IMG/VR virus record: IMGVR_UViG_3300021520_000002
Span: 62,001 to 126,000 of that record
Length of the DNA stretch: 64,000 nt
Strand: one strand, 5' to 3'
In this document: piece after piece, positions 4,632 through 54,635 of the stretch
How the letters are laid out: every line of letters starts with the position of its first letter
Numbering within the stretch: position 1 is the first letter of the stretch
The notes under the pieces: generated by a model
Databases searched by the model: none
The model's input: the letters and a program-made list of their open reading frames with translations, nothing else
Told to the model about the DNA's origin: nothing
Made by a program: the position numbers and the translations under genes

Positions 4632-5084
4632 ATGATTAGTATAACTTATTTATTCGAATCAGAAAAGGAGATCTTGCCGATGAAAATTGGTATTATAGGA
4701 TATTCAGCAAAAAAATTTGATAAAAAATTAGCTGAAAAATTAATTATAGAAGGTTTAAATAAATTCAAAGCTAAAGAAGGAGATGAGTTAGTTTCTGGAT
4801 TAACTGATTTAGGAATACCAGGATTAGCTTATAGAATCGGTAAAAAAAGAAATATGAAACTTATCGGTATTGCTTGTAAAAAAGCACACGATGAAGATAG
4901 TGTTTGTTATCCTGTTGATAAAGAAATAATAGTTGGAGATAATTGGGGTGATGAATCAAAAACATTTTTAAAATATATAGATATGTTAATTAAAGTTGGT
5001 GGTGGAAAACAATCAATAGAAGAATATAATAGATTCAAAGGTCCTAAAATTGAGTTTGAATTGGCCGCTAAAGAGGATAATTAA
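4632..5084 (+). CDS. SLOG-superfamily (DprA/LOG/YspA-like) nucleotide-binding protein with N-terminal MISITYLFE leader
   Basis: MKIGIIGYS, LVSGLTDLGIPGLAY, LIGIAC, VGGGKQSIEE match the SLOG Rossmannoid pattern. Confidence 0.7.
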   Translation: MISITYLFESEKEILPMKIGIIGYSAKKFDKKLAEKLIIEGLNKFKAKEGDELVSGLTDLGIPGLAYRIGKKRNMKLIGIACKKAHDEDSVCYPVDKEIIVGDNWGDESKTFLKYIDMLIKVGGGKQSIEEYNRFKGPKIEFELAAKEDN

Positions 5085-5410: not shown

Positions 5411-6007
5411 ATGTTATCAATAGGTTTTTTATTTGAAGATGAAGAAGATGATATTGATATGGAACAATATTTTGAAGATCGGACAAATTATCATATTGGT
5501 CTTGTAAATAGTTATTTAGATGAAATAATTGAATTACATGATCCACGTTTAGATCTTGCCGTTTTAGAACAAGAAAAAGAAATACATGATCAAAGTAAAT
5601 TTGAAGAACCAGAATATGAACCTTATGTTAAATTAACATGGAATTATTATTTAAAAGATCATGGTAAAAAAATTGATTCTTCACAAGATGAATTAAAGAA
5701 AATACAAGCGGCAACTTTTCATCATGTGAAGAATAATCAACATCATCCTGAATCTTGGGACGAGAATAGTACTATAGAAAGTATCAACAGTAAAGATAGA
5801 GATAAACCAGGGAAAATTGTTGATGCAACAAAAATGTCACTTAATTATATTGCAGCAATGGTAGCTGACTGGATGGCTATGTCAGAAGAGAAAGGAACAG
5901 ATCCATATAAGTGGTGTGAAATGAACATCAATAAAAGATGGAAGTTCACAGAAGAACAAGTTAAATTAATTTATGATCTATTGGATAAGATATGGAAGAA
6001 AAAATAG
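5411..6007 (+). CDS. HD-superfamily (DUF5662-like) phosphohydrolase with N-terminal MLSIGFLFE leader
   Basis: YH...HDQSKF...HHVKNNQHHPE...MVADWMAMS. Confidence 0.75.
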   Translation: MLSIGFLFEDEEDDIDMEQYFEDRTNYHIGLVNSYLDEIIELHDPRLDLAVLEQEKEIHDQSKFEEPEYEPYVKLTWNYYLKDHGKKIDSSQDELKKIQAATFHHVKNNQHHPESWDENSTIESINSKDRDKPGKIVDATKMSLNYIAAMVADWMAMSEEKGTDPYKWCEMNINKRWKFTEEQVKLIYDLLDKIWKKK

Positions 6008-25941: not shown

Positions 25942-26178
25942 ATGATTTCAGTAGTAGATTTATTTGAAGTGGGTGGTCCAAATGATGATAGAACATCTTT
26001 TGCGAATGAACGAATTGCTACGTTACAAAGGGCTTTCAAATCTGGAAGAATGAAAGCTCCTGATTATCAAGCTCAATTAAAACAATTTATGCAAATGAAA
26101 CGTGGAGTTCCATCAAAACAGATGCCAGAAAGTGAAATTAAAACGGCAGGAACTTATTTAAATTCTTCACCACAATAG
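25942..26178 (+). CDS. small protein with MISVVDLFE leader
   Basis: GAGGTG RBS before ATG 25942 (ORF track 25930). Confidence 0.7.
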   Translation: MISVVDLFEVGGPNDDRTSFANERIATLQRAFKSGRMKAPDYQAQLKQFMQMKRGVPSKQMPESEIKTAGTYLNSSPQ

Positions 26179-32487: not shown

Positions 32488-32976
32488 ATGCTTTTAGTAG
32501 AAGTTTTATTTGAACAAACTCCATCTCAAGTTCCTCCGGTACAAATTATTCAACATGTTACTCATACTCCAAAAGAACCTGATTCTAAATCGGTGGAGCC
32601 GAAACAACAGGAACAACCTGCCTCACAGGCACAAGCTGTTCCTCAGGAACAACAAATTCCACAGGGTCAGGAAACTGGAGACGAAGAAACAACTGGGGAA
32701 GAAATTCCAGAAGATGGACTTGGTGATGGTGGTCAGATGCAAGAGGAAGGTATTTCACCAGATCTTTTGCCGATTAAAAAATATTATTTGATTAGTAAAT
32801 TAAAAGAATTAAAGAATCAACTTATAGAATATAGTTTACAGAACGATGAACTTGATATCTTATTAAAATTTGCAGACAATCTATCATACAGTTCATTATT
32901 AAATGTTGGACTAATAATCACAGATGTTATTGGACAACAATTAGCGAGGTTAAAAGATGGCAAAAATACCAATTAG
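32488..32976 (+). CDS. acidic Gln/Glu-rich prohead core-like protein with MLLVEVLFE leader
   Basis: Between portal and protease; disordered Q/E/P-rich N-terminal half. Confidence 0.55.
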   Translation: MLLVEVLFEQTPSQVPPVQIIQHVTHTPKEPDSKSVEPKQQEQPASQAQAVPQEQQIPQGQETGDEETTGEEIPEDGLGDGGQMQEEGISPDLLPIKKYYLISKLKELKNQLIEYSLQNDELDILLKFADNLSYSSLLNVGLIITDVIGQQLARLKDGKNTN

Positions 32977-33721
32977 GAAATATAATTTTATATTTGAGAC
33001 TACCTCGATTAGTTCACGTGATGATATCAAGGTTTTAGAGGAAACAAAGTTACCTAATGGAAATGGAAAAATTTCAGCTTCTGTTAGGTTACAGGAAGCA
33101 GAAATGAAAAATAGTAATAGTCGATATTACTCAAATTCAATCTGTGAATCTATAGTGAATCAGTTATCTCCAAAAGCAAGTAGTCGTTCACTTTTAATGG
33201 AGATCGATCACCCTTTGTTTGTCTCTGACGATCAAAATGTTCTCAAAAGGAGAGCATCAATTGTTGAAATTAATAATTGTGGTAGTTTATTAAGAGAGAT
33301 AAGTTTTGCTGATAGAAAAGTGGGTGGTATATTTGAAACGCTTAGTGGTTTCAAAGGTCCAGATTTATATAATATAATTATGAAAGATAAGGTTGATGTA
33401 GGATTTTCGTTGAGAGCTCTTGGAGCAGTCGAACAACTTCAGGATGGAACAATAATGGTTAAAGATCCTATCAAACCAATTACTTATGATGTAGTTTCAA
33501 ACCCAAGTCACGCAACAGCAAAAGTTCTCGAATTCTTACCAGAAAACGTTACAGATTTTATGTCTGAACATAGTATGATTTATGAAGCAGCTGATATGGA
33601 GATGCTGGATCTAGATCATATAACTGTTGCAGACAGTACAATTTCATTAACAGAATTTTTCGACGACATTTATAAACAAAAATTTTCGGAAGTTATTACT
33701 AGAATAACTTTTAGAGTTTAA
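32957..33721 (+). CDS. prohead core protease (T4 gp21-like)
   Basis: NSNSRYY, EIDHP, VGFSLRALG, TYDVVSNPS. Confidence 0.9.
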   Translation: MAKIPIRKYNFIFETTSISSRDDIKVLEETKLPNGNGKISASVRLQEAEMKNSNSRYYSNSICESIVNQLSPKASSRSLLMEIDHPLFVSDDQNVLKRRASIVEINNCGSLLREISFADRKVGGIFETLSGFKGPDLYNIIMKDKVDVGFSLRALGAVEQLQDGTIMVKDPIKPITYDVVSNPSHATAKVLEFLPENVTDFMSEHSMIYEAADMEMLDLDHITVADSTISLTEFFDDIYKQKFSEVITRITFRV

Positions 33722-33749
33722 TAATATTATATTTAAAGGAGATTTAACT

Positions 33750-35357
33750 ATGTACGAACAAGCGATATTTGAAAATTATGAAATGTTCTTAAATGAGCAT
33801 AGTGATGAATTTTCTACTCCAAGTGGAGCATTGAAACTCATTACTGACAACGGTATGTTCAGATCTTATATGGAAGGTTTGACCAACGGCCTTGATTCAA
33901 ATCAGAGAGCTGTTGTTATGTCAGTAGCAAATCGTCAGAGGGAATATCTTTTAACAGAATCCGCAAACGTTCCAGGTTCTACACTGGCATTTGGTTGGAC
34001 TGTTCTTTCTTTCCCTATTCTTGTTGATATTTATGCTGAGCCAGTTGTGTCAGAGCTTTGCAATGTTTATCCAGTATCTTCACCAGTAGCTTCAATTCCT
34101 AGAATCAAAATTATGGCCTATATTAGGGGTTATGATGGAAACGTAACTCAGGTTCGTATGCCTACATTGAATCAGGCAGTAAGACCTGGTGCACTTAATC
34201 TTACAGTAACACCAGCCGTAAGTAATAACATTTTTACTATTGCTTCAGCTGCAGTTGCTCCTGCAACAGTAACATCAGATATGTACAGAATTAACAGGAG
34301 ATATACTCTTCTTACAGCTGTTCAGATTAATGAAACAACTGCTCTTGGTCCTGTTGTTGCACATAACGTATCAGTAACAATTAAACCAGACAACAGAAAT
34401 CAGTTTGTGGGTAGTTTTACATTTAATGATAATACTCCTGCTCCTGTTGGTCCTGTAGCAATTGTTGGTACTTTAAATGGTCATATTGACTATGATTCAG
34501 GCATATTCCAGTATCAGATTGTTTATGCAGTTGGTGCAACAACTTCTACTTTTGCAACAGTTTCAGCAACTATGACTATTCGTTTTATGTCTCTGACAAC
34601 TCAGAATGGTCGTATAAAAGTTAAGATTCAGACAGAAATGACTGATGTAAGCATCGATCAGAATGAAGATTTCTTGATTGAACTTCCTCCGGAAGATATT
34701 CAGGATTTCAGAGCAATCTTTAAGATTGACATTTTGAGAACACTTTCAGAAGCTATTAAGAGACAGATCATGTTAAACAAAGATCAGGATCTTGCATTCT
34801 TCTTAGCAGCTGCAGAAGGTGATATGGCATCTAATGGCGCAGCAGAAGCATTGAATCTTGCAAGTTTTGATGTAACTGGTGGACGTTTTGAGCCTAACAA
34901 AGTCATCGACGTTTTCAAAGCAGTAATTCCTAAGATTTCTATTCTTACTGGAATTATTCGTAGAAACTTCAACATGTATCCTTCTTATCTTGTCGCTGGT
35001 TTGAAGACTGCCGCATTACTTAGATCAGTTCAGACTTTCGCTCTCCAGATGCCAGGTATTGGAAATGGCGACGGAGCAGTAGGTTGGGCAGGGGATGTTG
35101 CACAGATGTTGAAGATGAAAGTTCTTGAGTCCAATGCAATCGCTGAAGGTAAGATTTATCTTTCAACGAAAGCTCCGAACAATGCTCTCGAGAAATCAGC
35201 AATTGTAGATTTGATTTATCAACCTCTTTACATTGTAACTGAGGTAACTGATGGTCAGACCAGGAACTATGTAAGATCCAGGACACTCATTGAAATTCCT
35301 AGAACAGATGGTCTTGGTGTTATTAATATTACTGGTCTTGGCACATATTTTACGTAA
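33750..35357 (+). CDS. major capsid protein
   Basis: 535 aa directly after the protease; probable maturation site YLLTE|SA near residue 70; C-terminal YQPLY...VRSRT; highly-expressed codon usage. Confidence 0.85.
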   Translation: MYEQAIFENYEMFLNEHSDEFSTPSGALKLITDNGMFRSYMEGLTNGLDSNQRAVVMSVANRQREYLLTESANVPGSTLAFGWTVLSFPILVDIYAEPVVSELCNVYPVSSPVASIPRIKIMAYIRGYDGNVTQVRMPTLNQAVRPGALNLTVTPAVSNNIFTIASAAVAPATVTSDMYRINRRYTLLTAVQINETTALGPVVAHNVSVTIKPDNRNQFVGSFTFNDNTPAPVGPVAIVGTLNGHIDYDSGIFQYQIVYAVGATTSTFATVSATMTIRFMSLTTQNGRIKVKIQTEMTDVSIDQNEDFLIELPPEDIQDFRAIFKIDILRTLSEAIKRQIMLNKDQDLAFFLAAAEGDMASNGAAEALNLASFDVTGGRFEPNKVIDVFKAVIPKISILTGIIRRNFNMYPSYLVAGLKTAALLRSVQTFALQMPGIGNGDGAVGWAGDVAQMLKMKVLESNAIAEGKIYLSTKAPNNALEKSAIVDLIYQPLYIVTEVTDGQTRNYVRSRTLIEIPRTDGLGVINITGLGTYFT

Positions 35358-35372
35358 AATTTAGTTAAAGAT

Positions 35373-35406
35373 ATCGGCAAGATCTAAATTAATAGATCTT
35401 GCCGAT
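35373..35406. repeat. intergenic palindrome copy 5
   Basis: ATCGGCAAGATCTAAATTAATAGATCTTGCCGAT. Confidence 0.95.
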
Positions 35407-35409
35407 TAT

Positions 35410-35438
35410 TTTATTTTTGGAGATTGAATATGATAAGT
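35410..35438 (+). repeat. 29-bp direct repeat (5'UTR/RBS/start), copy A
   Basis: TTTATTTTTGGAGATTGAATATGATAAGT, identical at 36783..36811. Confidence 0.95.
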
Positions 35439-35648
35439 TTGTTTGAAATGTTTAAATTAAATGTTGATTCTAAACCACCATCAGAATGGAGTAATACAAA
35501 TACAAAAGTTTATGCTAAAAATCAACCAACATTTGAAGAATTAATAGCTCATCGCAATAATAAACAACCAATTAATAATTTTGATGATAGTTTAAGAGCT
35601 AAACAAGTATCATATCACTTCTTGAAAAAATTAAAATTAAATAAGTAA
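35430..35648 (+). CDS. small protein with MISLFE leader
   Basis: GGAG RBS before ATG 35430 (ORF track 35424). Confidence 0.65.
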   Translation: MISLFEMFKLNVDSKPPSEWSNTNTKVYAKNQPTFEELIAHRNNKQPINNFDDSLRAKQVSYHFLKKLKLNK

Positions 35649-35673
35649 ACAAAGAAAATGGAGGCGTAAATAA

Positions 35674-36570
35674 ATGGCATTAAGTGAATTTTTAAAAGCG
35701 ATGGAAATAGTTAGTAATATTAAGAAACAAGAAGTTCCACTTCCAATAGCCAGAAAGAGTGCTGTCGTAAGTCCTCTTAGGGTTGGAGACGATTTATCAT
35801 TAAGATCATCATTAACTTCACCTGTTAACTATGATAGACAAATGACTAAATTGATATTTGATTTAACAGAATTTATGGCCGCTGAAGGTCAACCATTAAT
35901 TAAAGAAAATTTTGAGTTCTTTTGTAAAACAACATCTAATATTGATAAGATTTGTTTGATTTGGGGTTTATATAAAACTACATACGAATCATTAGGAAAG
36001 AGAACTTTTAAGTGTGATAAAGAGAATTGTAAAGCTGAATTTAAACAGGATGTATTATTAGACAGTTTAGTTAAAGAAGATACTTTCTGTCCTTGGGAAG
36101 AGGAAGAACTTCCTTTTCATGAATTTATTTGGGAGATAGTTGTTCCTTATGAACAGTTTGAATTTATATTTGAAAGTAGAATACCATCAATCAGTGATAA
36201 TAACAGAGTATTAAGTAATTTATCTATTGAGTCAGTTCAGGAAAATTTTCAGACAGGTGGTAATTTATTTAGTAGAAGTGAACAAATGACACTTCTTAAT
36301 AGATCAGTTGCAATTAAGAGTGTAGTTAATCCAAATAATGTTCCTAAAACAGAAAATATGCAAGAGTTATTAATTGCTTTCAGAAAATATGTTCCTCATA
36401 TAGTTTCTGAAAAATTCTTTATTGAATACAATAAGAAATTTGATAAATATTATCCAAAATTTTATACAATGATACCTTGTCCTCAGTGTGGTAATGAAAT
36501 AAAATTCACGGTAGACCTGGAATCAGAATTTTTTCGGAGAAGCTTATTTGGTGGAGGGGAGGGCAGCTAA
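35674..36570 (+). CDS. baseplate hub assembly / tail chaperone (T4 gp26-like)
   Basis: IDKICLIWGLYKTTYE, CxxxxC, RIPSISD, C-terminal CPQCG...EFF. Confidence 0.7.
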   Translation: MALSEFLKAMEIVSNIKKQEVPLPIARKSAVVSPLRVGDDLSLRSSLTSPVNYDRQMTKLIFDLTEFMAAEGQPLIKENFEFFCKTTSNIDKICLIWGLYKTTYESLGKRTFKCDKENCKAEFKQDVLLDSLVKEDTFCPWEEEELPFHEFIWEIVVPYEQFEFIFESRIPSISDNNRVLSNLSIESVQENFQTGGNLFSRSEQMTLLNRSVAIKSVVNPNNVPKTENMQELLIAFRKYVPHIVSEKFFIEYNKKFDKYYPKFYTMIPCPQCGNEIKFTVDLESEFFRRSLFGGGEGS

Positions 36571-36769
36571 GAATTATAAATATTTTGTTGATACATTTAT
36601 CTTATATCAAGCTATGTTTGACAATACTGGAGATCTTAATTCTATTCTCAATCTTCCATATCCTTTATACAATGATATTATTCTCAAACAGATTGAAGAG
36701 AAGAAAAGAGAAAAGAAGCTTCATGATGAAAATATGAGAAAAATGAAAACACAACCGAAAAAGAAATAG
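36548..36769 (+). CDS. small baseplate assembly protein (gp51-like/tail chaperone second ORF)
   Basis: Overlaps the gp26-like gene; ILNLPYPLYNDIILKQIEEKKRE. Confidence 0.55.
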   Translation: MVEGRAAKNYKYFVDTFILYQAMFDNTGDLNSILNLPYPLYNDIILKQIEEKKREKKLHDENMRKMKTQPKKK

Positions 36770-36782
36770 TTATCGGCAAAAA

Positions 36783-36811
36783 TTTATTTTTGGAGATTGA
36801 ATATGATAAGT
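36783..36811 (+). repeat. 29-bp direct repeat (5'UTR/RBS/start), copy B
   Basis: Identical to 35410..35438. Confidence 0.95.
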
Positions 36812-37078
36812 GTTAGTATATTATTTGAAATTGGAAATAGTCCAGAGATGAGAGATAAATTATTCAAATTATCAAATTCATATCAGAAATCAATGAAATT
36901 ATTAAAAGAACCAGAAGATATTTCTGCAAAACAAAAATTAAGTGCTGCAGGAAATAGAGCACTTCAATTAGGAAGAAGTATTTCTTATAGATTACATGGG
37001 CAAAATCCAGAAACAACCATGAAAATGGCAGGAATATATAAATCAATGCTTCAACGTGCACAAGGTGAAAAAAAATAA
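36803..37078 (+). CDS. small basic protein with MISVSILFE leader
   Basis: GGAG RBS before ATG 36803 (ORF track 36797). Confidence 0.7.
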   Translation: MISVSILFEIGNSPEMRDKLFKLSNSYQKSMKLLKEPEDISAKQKLSAAGNRALQLGRSISYRLHGQNPETTMKMAGIYKSMLQRAQGEKK

Positions 37079-37108
37079 GATCTTGCCGATAAAATTTGAG
37101 GGTATATT

Positions 37109-37639
37109 ATGACAATAGATTTAAGAACACTTCCGACAAATATACTAGAACAAATCCCTCTATCAATTAGAACTTTTCAATCAGTATATACTGTTGAAGA
37201 TTTACCGAGTAGAATTCAAGAATTGATTAAACAATATCTTGATGCTACTCCAATTGTAAAGTATTCTAATGTTTTCGATTTTAAACCAGAAATTTCAAAA
37301 TATAGTGATTTTCAAACTATTAATAATAAAGTTGATCTTGTTATAGAATATTTAAAAAATTATCTTTTAGTTTTACCAGAATCATATCCATTTGATCCAA
37401 TATTTGGATGTAGTTTAAAATATCATTTACAAACAAGAGATACTAATTTAAGACAAACATTAATATCTGCAGAGATAGATAAAGTTGTTAATATTTTATC
37501 TCTTCAGTTTAATGTTCCAATTATTGTTAAGAGTGTTATTATGAATCCTGTATCTGGAACAGTCTATAGTGAATTTAATATAAAGATTGATCTTCAGATA
37601 GGTGAATATTATAAAAGCATTAATGTTGAATTTACGTAA
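37109..37639 (+). CDS. gp25-like baseplate wedge / sheath initiator
   Basis: LKNYLLVLPESYPFDPIFGCSLKYHL. Confidence 0.75.
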   Translation: MTIDLRTLPTNILEQIPLSIRTFQSVYTVEDLPSRIQELIKQYLDATPIVKYSNVFDFKPEISKYSDFQTINNKVDLVIEYLKNYLLVLPESYPFDPIFGCSLKYHLQTRDTNLRQTLISAEIDKVVNILSLQFNVPIIVKSVIMNPVSGTVYSEFNIKIDLQIGEYYKSINVEFT

Positions 37640-37674
37640 AAAGATCTCAACCAGTTATAGTTGAGATCTTTTTA
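37637..37674. terminator. bidirectional terminator between convergent genes
   Basis: TAAAAAGATCTCAAC-cagttata-GTTGAGATCTTTTTA. Confidence 0.8.
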
Positions 37675-38472
37675 TTATGTATTAGTGTTTACATATTCTG
37701 AAATTTTATTCAAAGTTATTTCATTAGTTTTTTCAAGGTTATAACTTGCATGTATTAAAATTGGATTTTTTTCGTTTTTAAATAATTCTCTTATAAAACC
37801 TTTACGTAAATATATTTTATAAGTATTAGATACAATAATATCAAATATTGACCATAATGGAAGAATACGTTGAATAATATTAATGACTTCGAATTTTGAA
37901 CATTCACCAACATATAATTCAGATGGATTCATAATTGTGAAATATATTTGACAAATAGATTTATCTATAGTTACTAATATAAAACCATGATTTAAAATTG
38001 ATGGAAATGTTTTAAGAAAATCAGTTTTAAATTTAGTTTTTTGATCGTAATTTATACTATATTTTTGTGGTTCAATATTATTAAAAGTTAATTTTCCTTC
38101 TACACCAATTTCTAATTCATTTTGTTTTTTCTTTTCAACTACAGTTGTATAATGTATAAAACCATTTTCAGCTGTACCAAACATATCATCAGGCAAACGT
38201 TTTGTACAATCAAAATGTATCATATTATCTGAAACGCTATAAGTTGCAACTCCAGGAATAAGATCATATAATGATTGTATTTTAGTTAATTTGCCGATCT
38301 GTACGAAGAATTTTGAATAGAAATTATCATCCATTTTAACAAAGGGGCAAACAACATCTGTGATTGTATCTCTTATTTTTTTTGCTAAAATGAATTGTTG
38401 ATCTGATGATAGCATTACTTGTGTAAGATTGATATTTGATTTTTTGTTGTCAACTTGGTAATTAATTGGCAT
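37675..38472 (-). CDS. hypothetical protein, isolated minus-strand gene in the structural block
   Basis: AAGGAG RBS; own upstream motif and terminator. Confidence 0.7.
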   Translation of the reverse strand: MPINYQVDNKKSNINLTQVMLSSDQQFILAKKIRDTITDVVCPFVKMDDNFYSKFFVQIGKLTKIQSLYDLIPGVATYSVSDNMIHFDCTKRLPDDMFGTAENGFIHYTTVVEKKKQNELEIGVEGKLTFNNIEPQKYSINYDQKTKFKTDFLKTFPSILNHGFILVTIDKSICQIYFTIMNPSELYVGECSKFEVINIIQRILPLWSIFDIIVSNTYKIYLRKGFIRELFKNEKNPILIHASYNLEKTNEITLNKISEYVNTNT

Positions 38473-38515
38473 TTTTACACTCTCCTTTTATTGTATTATA
38501 TTTACTAAAAGTATC

Positions 38516-38525
38516 ATTTCTATAT
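38516..38525 (-). promoter_or_regulatory. putative phage promoter motif ATATAGAAAT
   Basis: Minus-strand copy upstream of 38472. Confidence 0.5.
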
Positions 38526-38552
38526 AAATTTAGAAGCTGATAAGGATAGAAT

Positions 38553-39512
38553 ATGTTAAACGCTCTATATGATCCACAGTCAGTTCAATCATATCATAGT
38601 GAATATTTAAAATTAATAAATTTTTATATGAATATTAAACGTCCAAGTTCATTTATTCGATATTACAATATTGATATTGATAATTCAACATATGATGAAA
38701 AATTGGAATCAACTTATGATATGTATCACGTTTCAAATATTAGATTTAATCTTTATGATTTTACTCCATCATTTTATTTAGCACCAGTTTTAAATGCGAC
38801 TGCTAATGTATCTGATCTTCGAGGACAAATGCTAGATGCAACATCTACAATTGTTACATATAGTATTGAGAAGCCAAGAATTCATGATTTAGTTATGTTT
38901 TATTCACCAGTTAAAGGTGGAGAAATTTTTAGAGTTACAAATTTTCGAACCCCGGTTAATGCAATACATTCAGATCCAAATCTCACATGGTTTGAAATGG
39001 ATCTTGAATATGCACCTTTATCAGATCCTGGCCGATTAAAAATTCTGAATCATTTTGTTTATGATTTATCTGAAGAGAAGTATATTAGTTATCAAGATTA
39101 TATAAAGTTTATGGATTTACTAAAATCATTAGAGGATTTACTAACTCAAATTTCAAAATTTTATGATTCATATAATGACTTATATCAATATACTCAGTTA
39201 GTCCCGGTTGAAGTTAATGAGTTATTGATATTCTTTAAAAGGACATATGCTAATAAGTATAAGAGAATACTAGAACAATTTTTATTACCTTATGGGTATC
39301 TTGACAATACAAATTTTCAGATGATGTATTCTGATGTTAACGAGTTACCTTTTGTTGCTGGAAATTATACATATCATGTTTATAATTTAACAACAAAACA
39401 AATTGAAGATTATACTTGGTCAGTATCTCATACTGAAGATCAAGTTGGACTTGATGAATTATTTTTATTAGCATTTAGACTTTTACAGATATCGTATGAT
39501 TGGAAAATTTAG
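38553..39512 (+). CDS. virion structural protein (neck/head-completion-like, tentative)
   Basis: FIRYYNID...KPRIHDLVMF...IFRVT; located in the tail cluster. Confidence 0.5.
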   Translation: MLNALYDPQSVQSYHSEYLKLINFYMNIKRPSSFIRYYNIDIDNSTYDEKLESTYDMYHVSNIRFNLYDFTPSFYLAPVLNATANVSDLRGQMLDATSTIVTYSIEKPRIHDLVMFYSPVKGGEIFRVTNFRTPVNAIHSDPNLTWFEMDLEYAPLSDPGRLKILNHFVYDLSEEKYISYQDYIKFMDLLKSLEDLLTQISKFYDSYNDLYQYTQLVPVEVNELLIFFKRTYANKYKRILEQFLLPYGYLDNTNFQMMYSDVNELPFVAGNYTYHVYNLTTKQIEDYTWSVSHTEDQVGLDELFLLAFRLLQISYDWKI

Positions 39513-39526
39513 TTTGGAGAACTATT

Positions 39527-41194
39527 GTGGCTAATGAACTTTCAACAACTCTAATAGAAACAAAAACAATCACAATTGATCAAATTAGAAATTTTTTTGA
39601 TCAACATATTAAAACTTATTATCCTTATAGAGATGATAAAGTCTATTCAACTTTAATTTCTAATTTGGTGGAATATTATTATAATAATATGTATAATGTT
39701 ATTCCACAAGAGTTAAAAGAGTTTATTGAACAATATAATATTGATAATGTTGATTTATATGATAGACTTCTTGTTGATATTGGTGTTCCAAATACACTAA
39801 TTCAACAACTTACATATAATGAAAAGTCTATTTTTTTAAAAAGTCTTGTTGATTTTTATCAGTATAAATCAACTTTAAAATTTGTTCAAAATGTTGGAGA
39901 AGCTTATATTGAAACTGATAGAATAAATATTTATGAACTTTATATTGATTATGATTTTGCACGTGAACAACCATGGGTATTAAAACCTATAAATATTCAT
40001 CATCATGATCAAGTTAATTTAACTGAAGAATCGTTAGATTATATTGATGCTTATGAGAGAATTCCATCATTATTAATTGATCCAGAAAGACTTAGTGTTA
40101 TGAGAGATGATAATCAACTTGTTTTGCCGATAAAATCAAATATATTGTTTCTCGATTACACTTTATCTACTGATGTTAGTACATTATATTCTTTAATTGT
40201 TGTGACATTTTTAAAAGAGTATAAGAACACTTATATTGAATTATATTTTGCCGATGGAACATCAATTTCATCTAAATTAGGTTCAATTCTTTTTGCTTGG
40301 TTTTATTTAATTAGTCAATATCATAATTATGATTGGCCTGCAATCGGAAACGATCCAATATATATTCCAGTAATGTTAACAATGTTATATGATAGTCCAA
40401 CATATCCTTATTCTATTACTGATTTAGATGGATTAATAACTGATTATAACAACATAACAACAATTACTGAAAGAGATGATTTTTATAAAGATAAACTTGC
40501 TATGAAATTTTATACTATTCCTATTGTAACATTTCAAGCAATTACACTTATAGAAATGCAAGGAATACTTAGAGTTTTAGATTCAGAATTAGGTTCATAT
40601 TTAGATTTAAAAATAAGTGAATCTGTATCAAGTATTGAAGATCTTTTAACAAATATATATACATCGTTAAATGTATATATAAATAGTTCATTAACACCAT
40701 CAGATTTTAAAAAATATTCTGAATATTTTATAAAATTTTTACCACAAATTATAGAAAATCCAACATTAACACCTACTTATAAAATTTTACAAATTCTTAA
40801 ACCATTTCATGTCGAATTGTATACTAGATTTCAAGAAATAATTTCATGTGATGATAAGTTTAATTCTATTTGGTTTGAAACTGGTGATGTTAATTATAGA
40901 TTTCTTTATAATGCAGCAAGTGTTTTTAATGCATCTGATATTTCAATATTTTCAACAGTAATGGCAAGTCAAAATGATGTTCTTTCAATTATAGATAGTT
41001 ATACTATTACAGATAGTATAGATTGGGTTGATAATCATTTTTATGATATTGATAAAGGAGTTAATATTACAGGTGTTGGTGATTATATTGCAGTAGTAGC
41101 TGGAATTAGTGGTTTAGTAGCTCCAACTTGGACTACTACTACTGGTGATATAATTGTTGATAATACAGTTCAATGGATGTGCATATCAGTTTAA
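39527..41194 (+). CDS. baseplate wedge protein (gp7-like)
   Basis: LVDFYQYKST and LKPFHVE motifs; GTG 39527 after GGAG (ORF track 39500). Confidence 0.6.
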   Translation: MANELSTTLIETKTITIDQIRNFFDQHIKTYYPYRDDKVYSTLISNLVEYYYNNMYNVIPQELKEFIEQYNIDNVDLYDRLLVDIGVPNTLIQQLTYNEKSIFLKSLVDFYQYKSTLKFVQNVGEAYIETDRINIYELYIDYDFAREQPWVLKPINIHHHDQVNLTEESLDYIDAYERIPSLLIDPERLSVMRDDNQLVLPIKSNILFLDYTLSTDVSTLYSLIVVTFLKEYKNTYIELYFADGTSISSKLGSILFAWFYLISQYHNYDWPAIGNDPIYIPVMLTMLYDSPTYPYSITDLDGLITDYNNITTITERDDFYKDKLAMKFYTIPIVTFQAITLIEMQGILRVLDSELGSYLDLKISESVSSIEDLLTNIYTSLNVYINSSLTPSDFKKYSEYFIKFLPQIIENPTLTPTYKILQILKPFHVELYTRFQEIISCDDKFNSIWFETGDVNYRFLYNAASVFNASDISIFSTVMASQNDVLSIIDSYTITDSIDWVDNHFYDIDKGVNITGVGDYIAVVAGISGLVAPTWTTTTGDIIVDNTVQWMCISV

Positions 41195-45226: not shown

Positions 45227-45539
45227 ACCGCAAATCTTTTGTGGTCTTATTTTCTTTATAATATTTGATCATATAATAAATTCTATAAGGTTGTAAACTC
45301 ATTAAAATACACAATATAGCTCCAAGAGGATGTTTTTTAAATCCAGCAATATTAGCATTTAATTCTCTTTTCCACACAATAATTTCTTTATCATTAACAT
45401 GATATGTTTCATGTTCAATTAAAAAATTTTGTACACATTTTGGTAGATCTCTTCTGATAGAAATATTTCCATCTAGATTTGAATTACCAAATTTTGGATA
45501 CAACTCTGATTTGGTTTTGAAATTAATTTTTATTTCCAT
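45225..45539 (-). CDS. small zincin-like (HExxH) protein
   Basis: FLIEHETYH...ELNAN; AGGAG RBS. Confidence 0.55.
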   Translation of the reverse strand: MEIKINFKTKSELYPKFGNSNLDGNISIRRDLPKCVQNFLIEHETYHVNDKEIIVWKRELNANIAGFKKHPLGAILCILMSLQPYRIYYMIKYYKENKTTKDLR

Positions 45540-45559
45540 TGAATTCTCCTAAAAAGAAA

Positions 45560-45598
45560 TTGGGTGACCCGAAGGTCACCCTTTGTTTATGCAATTTG
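45560..45598 (-). terminator. cUUCGg-loop terminator, 39-bp direct repeat copy A
   Basis: Minus strand GGGTGACC-TTCG-GGTCACCC then T-rich; repeated at 46850..46888 with one mismatch. Confidence 0.85.
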
Positions 45599-46183
45599 TA
45601 CATCTACTTTTTCTTCTAAAGGTTGTATTCCTTCCTTCAAAAGTTCTTCATCTGTCCATTTTTTACCAGAATCAATACATTTTACTTTAATTTTACCAAG
45701 ATAATATGGAAGATCTGCTTTTCTATTTTTCTTGGCGCACCATTGTTTTCCAAACTCTTCATCATTGAATGGAATCAGATCATCAATTCTCATCTCATAT
45801 GGAGGAGCGCCAGCGAAACATCCAGAATCCTGGAACAGACAGAATCGTTCAATAAAACCATCCTTGTCGACAAATATGTCTGATCCACCAAAGATTCCAT
45901 ATGGATAGAAATATCCACAATCTTTTAAAAAATCTTTAATAATCATATCTTCTGGATCAATTGTATCATCCAGAGTTAAAATTTTTCCATCTTTATTAAA
46001 ATATGAAGATGGAACATCTTTTTCAAATTCGATAACTATTTTCAGAAATTTTTGGTTTTGATATGTTTCAAAATCGAATTTTTCTTCTTTATTTATTTTT
46101 GTTTGTACAGCATCAATAACTTTACCATTTCCCAATTCTGGGTGAACTATTTTAACTCCTTTAAAAACATCTATAGCTTTCAT
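45587..46183 (-). CDS. hypothetical protein
   Basis: AAGGAGG RBS; 198 aa. Confidence 0.7.
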   Translation of the reverse strand: MKAIDVFKGVKIVHPELGNGKVIDAVQTKINKEEKFDFETYQNQKFLKIVIEFEKDVPSSYFNKDGKILTLDDTIDPEDMIIKDFLKDCGYFYPYGIFGGSDIFVDKDGFIERFCLFQDSGCFAGAPPYEMRIDDLIPFNDEEFGKQWCAKKNRKADLPYYLGKIKVKCIDSGKKWTDEELLKEGIQPLEEKVDVQIA

Positions 46184-46419
46184 AACTCCTCCTTAAATTC
46201 TCATATTAGCAGCAATACATGTTCCTGGTTTCTCTCGCTGAATGAATACAACACACCAATGTAATCTTTTTGCTTCTTTAAAAGCTTTAATAAAACCATC
46301 AAATGAAAATTCAAAATCTTGACATATATCATTGTATCCGAATACTTTATACATTTTTTCTCCTCCTTTCAATTTTCACATTTACGACATTCTTCGAGCT
46401 TCATTTTTTCTCCTTGAAT

Positions 46420-46749
46420 TCAAACCAATTTATTAATCATTTTTTTATCTATATCAGTTTCGGTTATATCTTTTAATCTTAATCCGGTTATATTTGCTAT
46501 TTCAAGCGCATTTGACTTCGGAATCATCCACATTCTGTAGAGATATCCAGTGTCTAAATTAAAATCTATTAACCCGGATTTCATTGTAGGGTGATACATC
46601 TTCCCATCGATAGATATGGGTAAAAATCTGGTTAATGCAATACAGACACATTCTCCTTCTGGAATAATTAATTTGACTCCATAAGTGCATTTTTCAGATA
46701 TTACATTATCACTCATTGCAGCTTTTCCTTCTTTAAATTCAATTATCAT
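46420..46749 (-). CDS. hypothetical protein
   Basis: AAGGAG RBS. Confidence 0.65.
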   Translation of the reverse strand: MIIEFKEGKAAMSDNVISEKCTYGVKLIIPEGECVCIALTRFLPISIDGKMYHPTMKSGLIDFNLDTGYLYRMWMIPKSNALEIANITGLRLKDITETDIDKKMINKLV

Positions 46750-46816
46750 TTTTATTCTCCTTCCTCCTTTAGAATTAATAAAGATATCTATTTCTAGACT
46801 CTTATTATACTTTATT

Positions 46817-46826
46817 ATTTCTATAT
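46817..46826 (-). promoter_or_regulatory. putative phage promoter motif ATATAGAAAT(AATAAA)
   Basis: Between a terminator and the next minus-strand gene. Confidence 0.55.
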
Positions 46827-46849
46827 GAGAAGATTAAAAACAAAAAAAT

Positions 46850-46888
46850 TTGGGTGACCCGAAGGTCACCCTTTGATTATGCAATTTG
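46850..46888 (-). terminator. cUUCGg-loop terminator, 39-bp direct repeat copy B
   Basis: Matches 45560..45598. Confidence 0.85.
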
Positions 46889-47498
46889 AATATTTGATAT
46901 TTGCTATATTATAAGCTATAGCTGCATCCTCTTTAACATCAAAATAACCTAAATGTATTCGTTTTTTATTAATACTAATTAAAGCTTTCCATTTTTTATG
47001 ATATTTATTCCAACTAACACCTTTATAACCATTATTATTTTGAATAGTTCTATTATTAATATTTTGCAATTTAGTACAAACTCTTAAATTCTCTTCAAGA
47101 TTATTTAATCTATTTCTATTTTTATGATCTATTTCATATCCTTCTGGTACTACTTGTCCAGACATAGAAATTATTGCTTGATGTAATCTTATATTATGTT
47201 GTATATTATCTATATTTGACCATGAAGTTGCAACATAATTTCCATCTGTTAATCCCCATTTGTATTTTTCTATTTCTGATTTATATTTAAGATCAAAAAT
47301 AGTTTCAGCAACTTCTTTACATTTTCGATTATATAATTTCATTCTACAAATATTATTTTCAACTATAATTTCATTTGGATCATATATTGTTCTTTCTAAT
47401 ATTTTACCATGAATTCGGATTTGTTGATAATGTTTACTACAATAATCTGTTTTTCCGTAACAATTTTTAACACATTTTTCAATAGAACAAATTTTCAT
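46866..47498 (-). CDS. free-standing HNH homing endonuclease with AP2 domain
   Basis: RLHQ...EIDHKNRNRLNNLEENLR; GYKGVSW...KWKA...HLGYF...AAIAYN. Confidence 0.88.
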   Translation of the reverse strand: MKICSIEKCVKNCYGKTDYCSKHYQQIRIHGKILERTIYDPNEIIVENNICRMKLYNRKCKEVAETIFDLKYKSEIEKYKWGLTDGNYVATSWSNIDNIQHNIRLHQAIISMSGQVVPEGYEIDHKNRNRLNNLEENLRVCTKLQNINNRTIQNNNGYKGVSWNKYHKKWKALISINKKRIHLGYFDVKEDAAIAYNIANIKYSNCIIKG

Positions 47499-47718
47499 AA
47501 TAACTCTCCATTAAATCATATTTATAAAGGTAGCCCAGTTTTTAACGTTCTTTTAAATCAGTACAATGTATTCCTTCATTGTTTTTTGAATTGATTTTAC
47601 ATCTATAATTTGATGAATCAAAAGTATTTGATTCTATAAATTCTCCATGTTCACAGGTTAAGCATAATTGTGAATCAGGCCAATCATATATAGTAACTAT
47701 ATAATACATTGTTTCTCC

Positions 47719-48261
47719 TTATAATATATTAATTATAGTTATGAATGTAATTACAACAAATATTCCAGTATGAAAACCTGCTGAAACCATTTTTGCTTCA
47801 CCTGATTCCCAATTATATCTTGGAACAAATTGAATTTTCATATTTCCATCTTTATCTTTTACTTCAATTTTTTCAGTCATATGAAATTTTCTAAATGACC
47901 AAATTAATAGAATTACAACAAATGTATATATAATAAATATCATAACAGTTCTTGCAATATCTCTACCAATAACTTTATATACTAATAGAAACATTGCTGT
48001 TTTTCCTACTGGTGTTTTAGCAAATTCGTTTATATTTGTATTTAAACTTTTTGCCATTTCATCAATAGCTTTTCCAATTTCTCTTCCAACTCCAACCCAA
48101 CTTTTAACATTTTCTGGAGTTGATTCTTGTTTTTTCTGACTATCAATAATTTCATTTCTTGCATCTTTACCTATTTTTGATAAATCAACTGTTACAGTTT
48201 GAGCAACTGAAAAAGTTGCTGATATCAAAATCAAACATATTACAAGGTTTATTATTTTCAT
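47719..48261 (-). CDS. membrane protein with signal peptide
   Basis: N-terminal signal peptide plus two or three hydrophobic helices. Confidence 0.7.
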   Translation of the reverse strand: MKIINLVICLILISATFSVAQTVTVDLSKIGKDARNEIIDSQKKQESTPENVKSWVGVGREIGKAIDEMAKSLNTNINEFAKTPVGKTAMFLLVYKVIGRDIARTVMIFIIYTFVVILLIWSFRKFHMTEKIEVKDKDGNMKIQFVPRYNWESGEAKMVSAGFHTGIFVVITFITIINIL

Positions 48262-48623
48262 TTTTTCTCCTCAACATCTACATATGAAACTGATTTAGCA
48301 ATTCTATCACAAGTACAAAGAGCAATTCTTTTTGTATCATATGTCACTTTTACTAATTTACCACTTACTGCCGCAGTTTTAAATATTTTTATCATATCTA
48401 AACTATTAGGTATAAGTACATGTACATCTTCAGTAGACATAGAACCTACTCCATTTCTCATAATACCCATACTAATATCAGCAGCAACATAATCTGGACA
48501 AATAATTGGTGTTTCATTTGTTACTTTTTTAACTTGACCTATTAATTCACTATCTCGTTGGGTATAACCACAACTACTAATTAATATGATCATTAAACAC
48601 ATTACAAACATTTTTATTTTCAT
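48258..48623 (-). CDS. putative lipoprotein
   Basis: Lipobox-like ISSC after a hydrophobic leader. Confidence 0.65.
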   Translation of the reverse strand: MKIKMFVMCLMIILISSCGYTQRDSELIGQVKKVTNETPIICPDYVAADISMGIMRNGVGSMSTEDVHVLIPNSLDMIKIFKTAAVSGKLVKVTYDTKRIALCTCDRIAKSVSYVDVEEKK

Positions 48624-49613: not shown

Positions 49614-49614
49614 A

Positions 49615-50374: not shown

Positions 50375-50378
50375 TTAT

Positions 50379-52336: not shown

Positions 52337-52344
52337 TTCATTTA

Positions 52345-54340: not shown

Positions 54341-54353
54341 TTCTCCTCCTTTC

Positions 54354-54617: not shown

Positions 54618-54635
54618 AGTTTCTCCTTTAAAAAC

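What the first reader, a model, noticed from the sequence alone, without database searches (positions are those of the whole stretch)
35373..37091. A gene inserted inside a palindrome with a duplicated RBS/leader module: candidate cassette-capture system
The 36803 gene is enclosed by the two arms of a split palindrome: TATCGGCAA at 36771 and AGATCTTGCCGATA at 37078, overlapping its stop. Its 29-bp 5' module TTTATTTTTGGAGATTGAATATGATAAGT is identical to that of the unrelated 35430 gene, which abuts intact palindrome 5. Both encode MIS..LFE leaders and both interrupt conserved structural gene order. Inference: palindromes are insertion sites where an RBS plus capsid-targeting leader is joined to new cargo, an integron-like route to diversify injected proteins. 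No dedicated recombinase is visible in this window.
Basis: partly seen in the sequence, partly recalled or inferred. Interest (0 to 1): 0.88.

Follow-up and report, generated by a model that had tools for sequence, protein, structure and literature searches.

The report
Leader-tagged gene inserted into phage hairpin
In an uncultivated 286-kb freshwater phage, a small orphan gene with a shared start signal and short N-terminal tag has landed inside one copy of a repeated RNA hairpin, and relatives still keep the unbroken hairpin; this resembles gene shuffling already known in T4-like phages, not a new integron-like system.

Summary
The 29-nt module occurs exactly twice. Gene X (36803-37078, 91 aa) lies between ATCGGCAA (36772-36779) and AGATCTTGCCGAT (37078-37090).

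An 87%-identical relative has the intact palindrome at the same spot with no gene. The closest relative has a short hairpin there. Relatives at about 65% identity have nothing there.

The palindrome is one of 27-28 copies in the 61% of this 285.6-kb freshwater phage contig that was held. All inspected copies are intergenic. The copy after the capsid gene keeps its pairing through compensatory changes, and two lineages have an ordinary terminator in its place. I read it as an intercistronic RNA hairpin, not a dedicated insertion site.

The tag M-I-S-x(2-4)-L-F-E starts at least 11 small genes; eight have no palindrome nearby. The major capsid protein and a scaffold-like protein have similar N-termini ending in [LI]FE. 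This suggests a prohead-protease or capsid-targeting signal, which is inferred, not shown.

The slot after the capsid gene carries the same hairpin, RBS and leader joined to five different cargos in relatives.

Best reading: a hypervariable slot for leader-tagged proteins, exchanged by recombination in conserved flanks, plus one ectopic copy into a second hairpin. This parallels T4 internal proteins and PeSL shuffling. No recombinase was found, and an integron-like mechanism is not supported.

The parts
33750..35357 (+). Major capsid protein gene (535 aa). Its N-terminus is MYEQAIFE, an [LI]FE motif like the leader.
   Evidence: PHROG major head protein. PDB 7x30 major structural protein, E=1.6e-9. 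The N-terminal x(3-5)-[LI]FE-NYE is conserved in relatives.
35373..35406 (+). Intact palindrome or RNA hairpin (13-nt arms, 8-nt loop) 16 nt after the capsid gene stop. It marks the 5' edge of variable slot 1.
   Evidence: RNA fold -23.8 kcal/mol, z=-8.5. Terminator-like with a T-rich tail. Covariation across 10 relatives.
35410..35438 (+). Copy 1 of the exact 29-nt module: T-rich spacer, GGAG RBS and ATGATAAGT.
   Evidence: The same 32 nt are also at slot 1 of relative L066.
35430..35648 (+). Gene Y, 72 aa, with leader MISLFE. It is an orphan cargo at slot 1.
   Evidence: Only itself found among 5.8 billion proteins. No Pfam or PHROG hit.
35674..36570 (+). Conserved 298-aa structural-module gene of unknown function.
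   Evidence: Present in 71 database clusters and in every related locus fetched with it.
36548..36769 (+). Conserved 73-aa ORF that overlaps the end of the 298-aa gene in the +1 frame.
   Evidence: Conservation starts at residue 1, upstream of the first ATG.
36772..36779 (+). Left half of the split palindrome (ATCGGCAA, the first 8 of 13 arm bases).
   Evidence: It aligns with the left arm of the intact palindrome in L003.
36780..37072 (+). Inserted segment of 293 nt. It replaces the 6 nt GATCTG of the L003-type palindrome.
   Evidence: blastn of relative B against contig A breaks at window 36779 and 37073. A sediment relative has depth 0.17 over 36816-36979.
36783..36811 (+). Copy 2 of the exact 29-nt module.
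36803..37078 (+). Gene X, 91 aa, with leader MISVSILFE. Its N-terminal 34 aa are homologous to the slot-1 gene of relative L003.
   Evidence: 59% identity over 34 aa, E=5e-9. Orphan otherwise. An RNA-library contig spans 36627-37289.
37078..37090 (+). Right arm of the split palindrome (AGATCTTGCCGAT, complete). It overlaps the stop of X by 1 nt.
37109..37639 (+). Conserved 176-aa gene. It may be gp25-like, but this is not significant.
4632..4681 (+). Another leader (MISITYLFESEKE) followed in frame by an orphan right arm AGATCTTGCCGAT (4669-4681), then a second RBS and ATG at 4679. This may be a second junction between a leader and a half-palindrome.
25942..26178 (+). Leader gene (MISVVDLFE, 78 aa) with no palindrome. 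A TATATAGAAATAA motif lies upstream.
5411..6007 (+). Leader gene (MLSIGFLFE, 198 aa, DUF5662) with no intact palindrome.
32488..32976 (+). 162-aa gene between the portal-sized gene and the protease gene. Its N-terminus is MLLVEVLFE, so it looks scaffold-like.
   Evidence: The L003 homologue begins MFLVEVLFE.
32957..33721 (+). Prohead protease of the Peptidase_S80 family.
   Evidence: Pfam E=3.6e-6, above the cut-off. PHROG head maturation protease, E=3e-15.

Best explanation
The region holds two accessory-gene slots in the head and baseplate module of a jumbo phage. Both are built around copies of one repeated RNA hairpin. The hairpin ATCGGCAAGATCT-loop-AGATCTTGCCGAT most likely acts in the transcript as an attenuator or 3'-end stabiliser between cistrons. 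That would keep mRNAs such as the capsid mRNA more abundant than the downstream message. The peptide M-I-S-x(2-4)-L-F-E is a protein-level tag on many small proteins. It most likely marks them for the prohead core and for removal after Glu by the S80 prohead protease, as the T4 capsid targeting sequence does. Slot 1 lies just after the capsid gene. Its 5' flank (hairpin, T-rich spacer, GGAG RBS, leader codons) and its 3' flank (the last codons ..AATAAG, the stop, and the RBS of the next gene) are conserved. Different cargos are exchanged between them by recombination between co-infecting relatives. Gene X began as a slot-1 cassette. One ectopic event then copied it, from the base right after the hairpin to its ..AATAAG end, into the next hairpin copy 1.4 kb downstream. 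It entered between the first 8 bases of the left arm and the loop. The right junction shares a 5-nt AAATA microhomology with the loop. Slot 1 in this lineage now holds another cargo, Y, behind the same 29-nt module. Shown: the insertion and its boundaries, the empty alleles, the hairpin covariation, the recurrence of the leader, and the cargo diversity. Inferred: the RNA-level role of the hairpin, cleavage and targeting by the leader, and the recombination mechanism.
For: Empty and occupied alleles. L003 has the intact palindrome at the homologous site, in 24 contigs. L066-L069 have a short hairpin there. All relatives at about 65% identity have a 24-36 nt spacer with no palindrome. The blastn breakpoints are at 36779 and 37073. 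A sediment relative lacks the body of X.

Origin of X at slot 1. Its 5' end, AAATTTATTTTTGGAG, equals the sequence right after the slot-1 hairpin in L003. The slot-1 gene of L003 shares the X N-terminus. The X 3' end, AAATAAG, matches the common slot-1 3' end.

Cargo diversity at slot 1 behind the same leader. The cargos are Y, W (84 aa), X-long (139 aa), a glycine-zipper protein (97 aa) and a GNAT acetyltransferase (153 aa, E=4.5e-12). Some relatives have no leader gene there.

The leader is selected as a peptide. At least 11 genes in the held 61% of the contig carry it, with synonymous Ser and Ile codons. The capsid protein N-terminus keeps [LI]FE in relatives while the residues before it vary. 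An S80 protease is present.

Hairpin function. 94% of cells pair, 7 pairs change on both sides, and 0 of 500 shuffles reach this. L050 and L171 have unrelated stem-plus-T-run terminators at the same place. By my manual count from the copies listed, after re-pairing the AGAAATA-loop copies as 11-bp stems (the script's raw totals were 17 G-U and 8 A-C), there are about 12 G-U against about 3 A-C mismatches in the sense orientation. RNA-library contig depth falls from 10-12 over the capsid gene to 1-5 after the hairpin.

Known precedents: PeSL shuffling (PMC2839356, PMC4122927), and diverse T-even internal proteins that share only the capsid targeting sequence (PMC3012670).
Against: There is only one split palindrome, so the insertion mechanism rests on a single event. 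The left junction shows no microhomology.

The PeSL model predicts intact repeats on both sides of the cassette, not half arms.

No proteomic or cleavage data exist for this uncultivated phage. S80 proteases studied so far cut after A/S/G-x-E, whereas L-x-E is the T4 gp21 motif (my recollection of the literature, with PMC10052503 for S80).

The RNA evidence comes from assembled contigs of metatranscriptome libraries. These can contain DNA and tend to break at repeats.

The hairpin stem sequence is far more conserved than an ordinary terminator needs. Its 8-mer core is also strongly over-represented outside palindromes. An extra sequence-specific function therefore remains unexplained.
Confidence: 0.6

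Rival explanations
1. The palindromes are attachment sites of a dedicated, integron-like or hairpin-specific (HUH or tyrosine recombinase) cassette-capture system. The system inserts modules of RBS, leader and cargo.
For: A gene sits between two halves of a palindrome whose intact form exists in a relative. The palindrome stem is conserved far beyond structural need and is restricted to this phage clade. At a second leader junction, window 4632-4681, the leader also joins at the loop and right arm. Thirty-nine percent of the contig was not examined.
Against: Twenty-five or more of the 27-28 palindromes have no leader gene next to them. Eight of 11 leader genes have no palindrome. No integrase, transposase or HUH family appeared among the 25 listed of 33 Pfam families hit by 75 window ORFs. 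Cargo exchange at slot 1 leaves the hairpin intact and uses conserved flanks on both sides. The occupied allele is fixed in 23 contigs, with no context variants. In integrons the attC palindrome stays whole at the 3' end of each cassette, which is not the geometry here.
Confidence: 0.07
2. The biology is the same but the route differs. Unequal homologous crossover between the slot-1 hairpin and the slot-2 hairpin of two genome copies duplicated the whole interval (leader-X, the 298-aa gene and the 73-aa gene). Later deletions removed the redundant second copy, between the two AAATAAG motifs, and most of the upstream hairpin. This left X between half arms.
For: The two palindromes are direct 32-34 nt repeats 1.4 kb apart, which is the substrate used in PeSL shuffling (PMC2839356). 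The X 3' end AAATAAG and the loop plus right arm GAAATA-AGATC share microhomology suited to such a deletion. X moved by exactly one palindrome interval.
Against: This route needs three or four events where direct insertion needs one. No intermediate with a duplicated 298-aa gene turned up in any of the roughly 70 related clusters or loci examined. The upstream deletion has no clear flanking repeat.
Confidence: 0.2
3. X is ancestral at this site. The intact palindrome in L003 arose later, when X was lost and the site was converted from another palindrome copy. On this view the 'split palindrome' is two orphan half-sites.
For: The 8-mer core occurs as an orphan 18 times in the window, so half-sites are common. 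The short hairpin in L066 could be a deletion scar of X, since ATCAGCAAAATTTC resembles ATCGGCAAAAATTT.. joined to ..CTTGCC.
Against: Outgroups at about 65% identity have neither X nor a palindrome at this site. The flanks of the half arms match the flanks of the L003 palindrome base for base. Both ends of X carry slot-1 boundary sequences.
Confidence: 0.05

Closest known systems
PeSL (promoter-early stem-loop) regulatory cassettes of T4-type phages (Arbiol et al. 2010, PMC2839356; Comeau et al. 2014, PMC4122927)
   Same: Both have a short conserved intergenic motif with a terminator-type stem-loop, repeated many times in one phage genome. In both, orphan genes that differ between close relatives lie next to the motif, and recombination at the motif is proposed to shuffle genes without a dedicated recombinase.
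   Different: PeSLs combine a strong sigma-70 early promoter with the stem-loop and lie in early hyperplastic regions. Here the hairpin is followed within 10-25 nt by the next RBS, with no promoter, and it lies in late structural operons. PeSL cassettes are flanked by two whole repeats and form mini-circles. Here the one inserted cassette lies between two halves of a single hairpin, and circles were not tested.
T4 internal proteins (IPI, IPII, IPIII, Alt) with the capsid targeting sequence, and the polymorphic IP locus of T-even phages (PMC3012670, citing Repoila et al. 1994)
   Same: Both have a short conserved N-terminal leader ending in hydrophobic-x-Glu on otherwise unrelated small proteins and enzymes. 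Both encode a prohead protease. Both have a locus where relatives carry different cargos behind the same leader.
   Different: The leader sequence differs (MISxSxLFE against the T4 MKTYQEFIAE, the latter from memory). The protease family is S80 (phiKZ and SPN3US type), not T4 gp21. Packaging, cleavage and ejection are untested here. Here the capsid protein itself carries a short N-terminal [LI]FE motif only 6-8 residues from its start.
Integron gene cassettes (attC x attI recombination by IntI)
   Same: Both involve a promoterless ORF associated with an imperfect palindrome and inserted at a palindromic site, and a variable cargo set.
   Different: No IntI-type recombinase was found in the window. 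The attC palindrome stays whole at the 3' end of each cassette, whereas here the palindrome is split around the gene. There is no attI or Pc promoter. Most palindromes here carry no cassette.
Intercistronic REP-type or terminator hairpins that set differential mRNA stability within operons, and uptake-sequence pairs that double as terminators (general knowledge)
   Same: Both are repeated, sequence-conserved inverted repeats placed after stop codons between co-directional genes. The single half-motif is also over-represented elsewhere in the genome.
   Different: This is a phage-borne family restricted to one clade of uncultivated jumbo phages. Its binding partner or processing enzyme is unknown.

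Membership tests
PeSL-type mobile regulatory cassette | Conserved intergenic motif with a stem-loop terminator, repeated across the genome | tested here: met
   27-28 copies in the held 61% of the contig, and 8 in relative B. Fold energy -23.8 kcal/mol. Covariation.
PeSL-type mobile regulatory cassette | The motif includes a strong sigma-70-type early promoter | tested here: not met
   The RBS and start codon follow the hairpin within about 10-25 nt at most copies. Sigma-70-like hits are no more frequent than in shuffles. A different promoter-like motif, TATATAGAAATAA, adjoins only the 58530 copy.
PeSL-type mobile regulatory cassette | Genes that differ between close relatives are contiguous with the motif | tested here: met
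   Slots 1 and 2 differ among the window, L066, L003 and L054. Other indels between contigs A and B are linked to HNH or intron-type insertions instead.
PeSL-type mobile regulatory cassette | The cassette is flanked by two whole repeats, and mini-circles exist | tested here: not met
   X is flanked by an 8-nt left half and a 13-nt right arm of one palindrome. Circles could not be tested, because only assembled contigs were available.
CTS-tagged internal (ejected) head proteins, T4 type | A short conserved N-terminal leader shared by otherwise unrelated proteins | tested here: met
   At least 11 genes in contig A, plus relatives. Cargos include GNAT, DUF5662, a glycine zipper and orphans. Synonymous codon variation shows selection on the peptide.
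CTS-tagged internal (ejected) head proteins, T4 type | The leader ends at a prohead-protease cleavage motif, and a protease gene is present | tested here: inconclusive
   L-F-E fits the T4 L/I-x-E rule, and an S80 protease is encoded. The capsid and scaffold-like proteins share [LI]FE. Known S80 enzymes prefer A/S/G-x-E, and no cleavage data exist.
CTS-tagged internal (ejected) head proteins, T4 type | The proteins are packaged in the capsid and ejected | not testable with these tools
   The phage is uncultivated and known only from lake metagenomes.
Integron | An IntI tyrosine recombinase with adjacent attI and Pc promoter | tested here: not met
   No integrase or recombinase family is among the 25 listed of 33 Pfam families hit by 75 window ORFs. 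The other 8 families and 39% of the contig were not seen.
Integron | Each cassette carries a whole attC palindrome at its 3' end, and cassettes form arrays | tested here: not met
   The palindrome is upstream of the cassette at slot 1 and split around it at slot 2. Leader-gene arrays at contig A 40160-40930 contain no palindromes.
Rho-independent (intrinsic) terminator | A G+C-rich stem-loop followed by a U-tract, placed after a stop codon, with transcripts ending there | tested here: inconclusive
   The stem and position criteria are met at all copies. The 35373 copy has a T-rich tail and passes the scan, but many copies lack a T-run. RNA contig depth drops about 3-fold after 35373, but these are contigs, not reads. 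Classic terminators replace the hairpin in L050 and L171.
IS200/IS605 or REP/RAYT hairpin-targeting elements | An HUH (Y1) transposase, with insertion 3' of a fixed tetra- or pentanucleotide next to a hairpin | tested here: not met
   No Y1_Tnp or RAYT family is in the window sweep. The 293-nt insert encodes only the 91-aa orphan.

The most novel reading that the evidence does not exclude
The hairpin, or its over-represented 8-mer core TTGCCGAT, is recognised by an unidentified phage or host factor that cuts or stalls at it. That would make every copy a programmed recombination hotspot. The phage would then use these hotspots to capture and move leader-tagged genes for packaged proteins. This would be a recombinase-free or novel-recombinase cassette system that diversifies the set of injected proteins in jumbo phages.
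Probability: 0.08. Interest if true: 0.85.

Novelty: new variant of a known kind. Interest (0 to 1): 0.5.

Why it matters
The locus preserves clear before and after states of a gene gain in a phage structural operon. The intact hairpin, a short hairpin and the gene-occupied hairpin all survive in close relatives.

It also reveals a previously undescribed leader, MISxSxLFE, shared by the capsid protein, a scaffold-like protein and at least 11 small variable proteins of an uncultivated freshwater jumbo phage.

If the leader is a capsid-targeting and cleavage tag, it offers a simple sequence rule for listing the packaged, probably ejected, proteins of this phage clade. Those include enzymes such as a GNAT acetyltransferase. 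It also extends the T4 pattern of a conserved tag on variable cargo to a phage with a phiKZ-type protease. Such proteins are prime candidates for anti-defence functions.

It does not reveal a new recombination machine.

Tried and rejected
- blastn of 33700-39600 against 50,697 GenBank phage records gave no match, so no annotated relative exists.
- Pfam and PHROG scans of X, Y and the neighbouring genes gave nothing for X and Y.
- Word-indexed homologue searches for X and Y returned only the proteins themselves.
- The ESM Atlas search for X gave no lead: model pLDDT 0.51, best feature score 0.73.
- Exact-protein look-up of X returned 23 contigs, all with identical context, so no alternative locations were found.
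- A search of IMG/VR for relatives of the 4632 leader gene returned only the source contig. The history of that half-palindrome therefore could not be traced.
- Scanning GTDB genomes for the palindrome gave scattered single hits in unrelated bacteria, plus a few low-GC contigs that are probably mis-binned relatives. None covered the capsid region.
- Read laying joints 35385 to 37076 and 35394 to 37076 were rejected as matches to other palindrome copies. The 36779 to 37083 joint has depth 2 and a 28-nt side, so it is only weak support for an empty allele in the sediment sample.
- I tried to derive both insertion junctions from one microhomology or slippage scheme. The right junction fits (AAATA), but the left does not.
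- Repoila et al. 1994 is not in the paper library. It is cited only through the T4 head review.
- I rejected the idea that Y is the C-terminal remnant of an X-long type gene. BLASTP shows no similarity beyond the shared final codons.
Full report
**What the window is.** The window is bases 62001-126000 of IMGVR_UViG_3300021520_000002, a 285,572-bp viral contig from lake water. It has 29% G+C. No GenBank phage matches it at the DNA level. The region of interest lies in a head and tail module on the + strand.
- The gene at 32957-33721 is a Peptidase_S80 prohead protease.
- The gene at 33750-35357 is the major capsid protein (PDB 7x30, E=1.6e-9).
- Then come a 298-aa gene, an overlapping 73-aa ORF and a 176-aa gene. 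This order is kept in all related loci whose held sequence spans these genes, among the 23 from metagenomes and 3 from IMG/VR.
- The labels 'gp51-like' and 'gp25-like' could not be confirmed.

**Checking the observation.**
- The palindrome ATCGGCAAGATCT-AAATTAAT-AGATCTTGCCGAT lies at 35373-35406.
- TATCGGCAA is at 36771-36779.
- AGATCTTGCCGATA is at 37078-37091 and shares one base with the TAA stop of the 36803 gene.
- The 29-nt module is exact at 35410-35438 and 36783-36811, with none expected by chance.
- The 13-nt arm is found 23 times in the window at up to 2 mismatches, against about 1 expected.

**The palindrome family.** A pattern scan of IMG/VR found the palindrome in only six contigs, all from this phage group.
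- The held 61% of the source contig has 27-28 intact copies. The held half of the 87%-identical relative (contig B, the source of L003) has 8.
- Each of the eight copies in the window lies between co-directional genes a few bases after a stop codon. The flanks listed for the other copies show the same layout where they can be read: the next RBS and start codon usually follow within 10-25 nt, leaving no room for a promoter.
- The copy after the capsid gene folds at -23.8 kcal/mol (z=-8.5). It is the only copy in 28-46 kb that also passes a stem-plus-T-run terminator scan.
- Across ten relatives this hairpin is 94% paired. Seven pairs change on both sides, for example ATCGGCCAG/CTGGCCGAT, ACCGG/CCGGT and CGGTAAG/CTTACCG. 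None of 500 shuffles reaches this.
- In two lineages (L050/L051 and L171) the same position holds an unrelated classic terminator.
- By my manual count from the copies listed, after re-pairing the AGAAATA-loop copies as 11-bp stems, imperfect copies oriented by their flanking genes carry about 12 G-U and about 3 A-C mismatches on the sense strand; the script's raw totals were 17 and 8. The loop reads AGAAAT(A) in the sense direction on both strands.
- In two metatranscriptome libraries, contig depth is 10-12 over the capsid gene and 1-5 after the hairpin. This is weak evidence, because these are contigs and DNA carry-over is possible.

I conclude that the palindrome is mainly an intercistronic RNA hairpin that acts as an attenuator, terminator or stabiliser. 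Its stem sequence is conserved far more than structure alone needs. Its 8-mer core TTGCCGAT occurs 34 times in the window against 0.6 expected, and 18 of those lie outside palindromes. This remains unexplained.

**The empty site exists.** In L003 the homologous spot between the 71-aa ORF and the 181-aa gene reads ..AAATAG-AT-ATCGGCAAGATCT-GAAATA-GAATCTTGCCGAT-AAAACTTGAGG... This is an intact palindrome with no gene. The same allele is in 24 contigs.
- The closest relative (L066-L069, in the same 90% cluster for the 298-aa protein) has a short hairpin there and no gene: TTATCAGCAA-AATTTC-TTGCCGAT.
- All relatives at about 65% identity have a 24-36 nt spacer with neither palindrome nor gene.
- blastn between the two contigs breaks at window 36779 and 37073. 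So 293 nt (36780-37072) replace just GATCTG of the palindrome. The right junction shares AAATA with the loop.
- A sediment metagenome holding a 95-99% relative has depth 0.17 over the body of X, against 3-8 on either side.
- With the outgroups as reference, the order of events is: gain of a hairpin at this site, then insertion of X into it.
- In this phage the occupied state is fixed. X is found in 23 contigs from several samples, always in the same context.

**Where X came from.** The left end of the insert, AAATTTATTTTTGGAG.., is the sequence that follows the right arm of the slot-1 hairpin in L003 (AAATTTTATTTTTGGAG..).
- The L003 slot-1 gene shares its N-terminal 34 residues with X (59% identity, E=5e-9).
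- The right end of the insert..AAATAAG, matches the shared 3' end of slot-1 genes (..AATAAGTAA). That in turn is the remnant of the last codons (..LNK) of an older 90-aa gene, 'Z', which still occupies slot 1 in the distant relatives.
- X is therefore a slot-1 cassette copied into the next hairpin downstream.
- In L003 the leader ATG of this gene has become ATA. The ORF opens only from an ATG inside the hairpin loop, so that copy may be decaying.

**Slot 1 is hypervariable.** Behind the same hairpin, spacer, RBS and leader, the states found are:
- Y (72 aa) in the window;
- W (84 aa) in L066, with the identical 32-nt module;
- X-long (139 aa) in L003;
- a glycine-zipper protein (97 aa) plus Z in L054;
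- a GNAT acetyltransferase (153 aa, Pfam E=4.5e-12) plus Z in L041;
- Z alone in six lineages;
- nothing in four lineages.

X and Y have no homologues among 5.8 billion proteins, and the Atlas gave no lead.

**The leader.** The motif M-[IL]-S-x(2-4)-[LI]-F-E starts five genes in the window (4632, 5411, 25942, 35430, 36803). It starts at least 11 genes in the held part of the contig, including a tandem array of four at contig position 40160-40930, where relative B has one.
- Ser and Ile are encoded by different codons in different genes. So the peptide is under selection, not the DNA.
- Only the two copies in the finding share non-coding bases as well, which marks a recent duplication.
- The capsid protein begins MYEQAIFE-NYE. 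Relatives keep x(3-5)-[LI]FE-NYE while the residues before it vary.
- The 162-aa gene before the protease begins MLLVEVLFE.
- Together with the S80 protease, this points to a cleavage and targeting tag like the T4 capsid targeting sequence. That sequence is the only feature shared by the otherwise diverse T-even internal proteins (PMC3012670). This is inference. S80 proteases studied so far cut after A/S/G-x-E (PMC10052503 and my recollection), whereas hydrophobic-x-E is the T4 gp21 rule.

**Are leader genes linked to palindromes?** Mostly they are not. Eight of 11 have none nearby, and 25 or more palindromes have no leader gene beside them.
- There is one further link. At 4632-4681 a leader (MISITYLFESEKE) runs in frame into an orphan right arm (AGATCTTGCCGAT, read as ILP) and a second RBS and ATG.
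- This resembles the right junction of X with the cargo missing. I could not trace its history.

**Recombinase.** A Pfam sweep of 75 window ORFs hit 33 families. The 25 listed include HNH_3 and AP2 (a homing endonuclease), terminase, tail sheath, S80, DnaB, Apyc1 and heptose-pathway enzymes. There is no integrase, transposase or HUH family among them. Eight families and 39% of the contig were not seen.

**Mechanism.**
- Cargo exchange at slot 1 leaves both flanks intact. Homologous recombination between relatives in the conserved 5' and 3' flanks explains it best, as proposed for PeSL cassettes (PMC2839356, PMC4122927) and the T-even IP locus.
- The slot-2 event is a single ectopic insertion. 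I favour illegitimate, microhomology-assisted copying into a hairpin, since hairpins are known trouble spots for replication.
- I list as a rival an unequal crossover between the two hairpins followed by deletions.
- The split arms are still predicted to pair around the X ORF in RNA (10 bp, in both the MFE and centroid folds, z=-2.4). An RNA-library contig spans 36627-37289. So X is probably read through with its neighbours.

**Verdict.** The integron-like mechanism is not supported. The system is a new variant of known phage strategies: CTS-tagged variable head proteins, and shuffling at repeated regulatory hairpins.

Noticed in passing
whole window, e.g. 1181, 3666, 8661, 32767, 38291, 40124, 40248, 50041, 50130, 56915, 59137: The 8-mer core of the palindrome, TTGCCGAT (or ATCGGCAA on the other strand), occurs 34 times in the window against 0.6 expected. 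Eighteen of these lie outside palindromes, mostly inside coding regions and in different frames. This suggests a sequence-specific signal of the Chi or uptake-sequence type, or a protein-binding site, beyond hairpin formation.
   Followed up: partly
window 3319, 25910, 38514(-), 46815(-), 58495(-), 61490(-): The motif TATATAGAAATAA occurs 6 times at up to 1 mismatch, against 1.4 expected. Each copy is intergenic and oriented toward the downstream gene, so it is a candidate phage promoter. At 58495 it sits right next to the 58530 hairpin, forming a PeSL-like terminator-promoter pair.
   Followed up: partly
window 36548-36570: The 73-aa ORF overlaps the end of the 298-aa gene in the +1 frame. 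It is conserved from its first residue (VEGRAAKNYKYF), upstream of any ATG, in all relatives. It either starts at TTG or GTG behind a GGAG, or it is reached by a programmed frameshift.
   Followed up: no
L003 3557-4916 (contig B 69450-70778); also L002: The major capsid gene of relatives is interrupted by an insert of about 1.3 kb that carries an HNH-type endonuclease ORF and looks like an intron. The capsid gene in the window is uninterrupted. One window ORF matches HNH_3 and AP2.
   Followed up: partly
contig A 40160-40930 (outside the window; L034): Four small leader genes (57-67 aa) stand in tandem, with conserved N- and C-termini and variable middles. Relative B has a single gene there. 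This is expansion of leader genes without any palindrome.
   Followed up: partly
L003 5547-5966: The slot-1 homologue of X in the 87% relative has ATA instead of the leader ATG. The ORF opens only from an ATG inside the hairpin loop, so the gene may be decaying or may use a non-canonical start.
   Followed up: no
window 45228-63791, - strand: The early-type gene block includes a homologue of the anti-Pycsar protein Apyc1 (E=2.5e-28). It also includes a set of sugar-nucleotide genes (PfkB kinase, cytidylyltransferase-like, SIS, HAD phosphatase) that suggests heptose-type modification.
   Followed up: no
window 62986-63893 and 19740-20412: There are five tandem copies of a 162-nt unit inside - strand ORFs at the window end. 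There are also four copies of a 198-nt glycine-rich repeat inside the 1643-aa protein.
   Followed up: no
L091, L093, L100, L107, L112, L142 (CAZRCF010000001.1, 256,708 bp): A 257-kb, roughly 29% G+C contig binned as a Lentimicrobiaceae MAG carries at least 6 copies of the same palindrome. Contigs of a 'Bacteroidetes WAS_Bin_9' MAG carry 4. These are probably related jumbo phages. They are a weak hint that the host is a Bacteroidota.
   Followed up: partly
window 37636-37675: A different 16-bp hairpin (GTAAAAAGATCTCAAC..GTTGAGATCTTTTTAT) lies between the convergent 176-aa (+) and 265-aa (-) genes. It is probably a bidirectional terminator. It also contains AGATCT.
   Followed up: no
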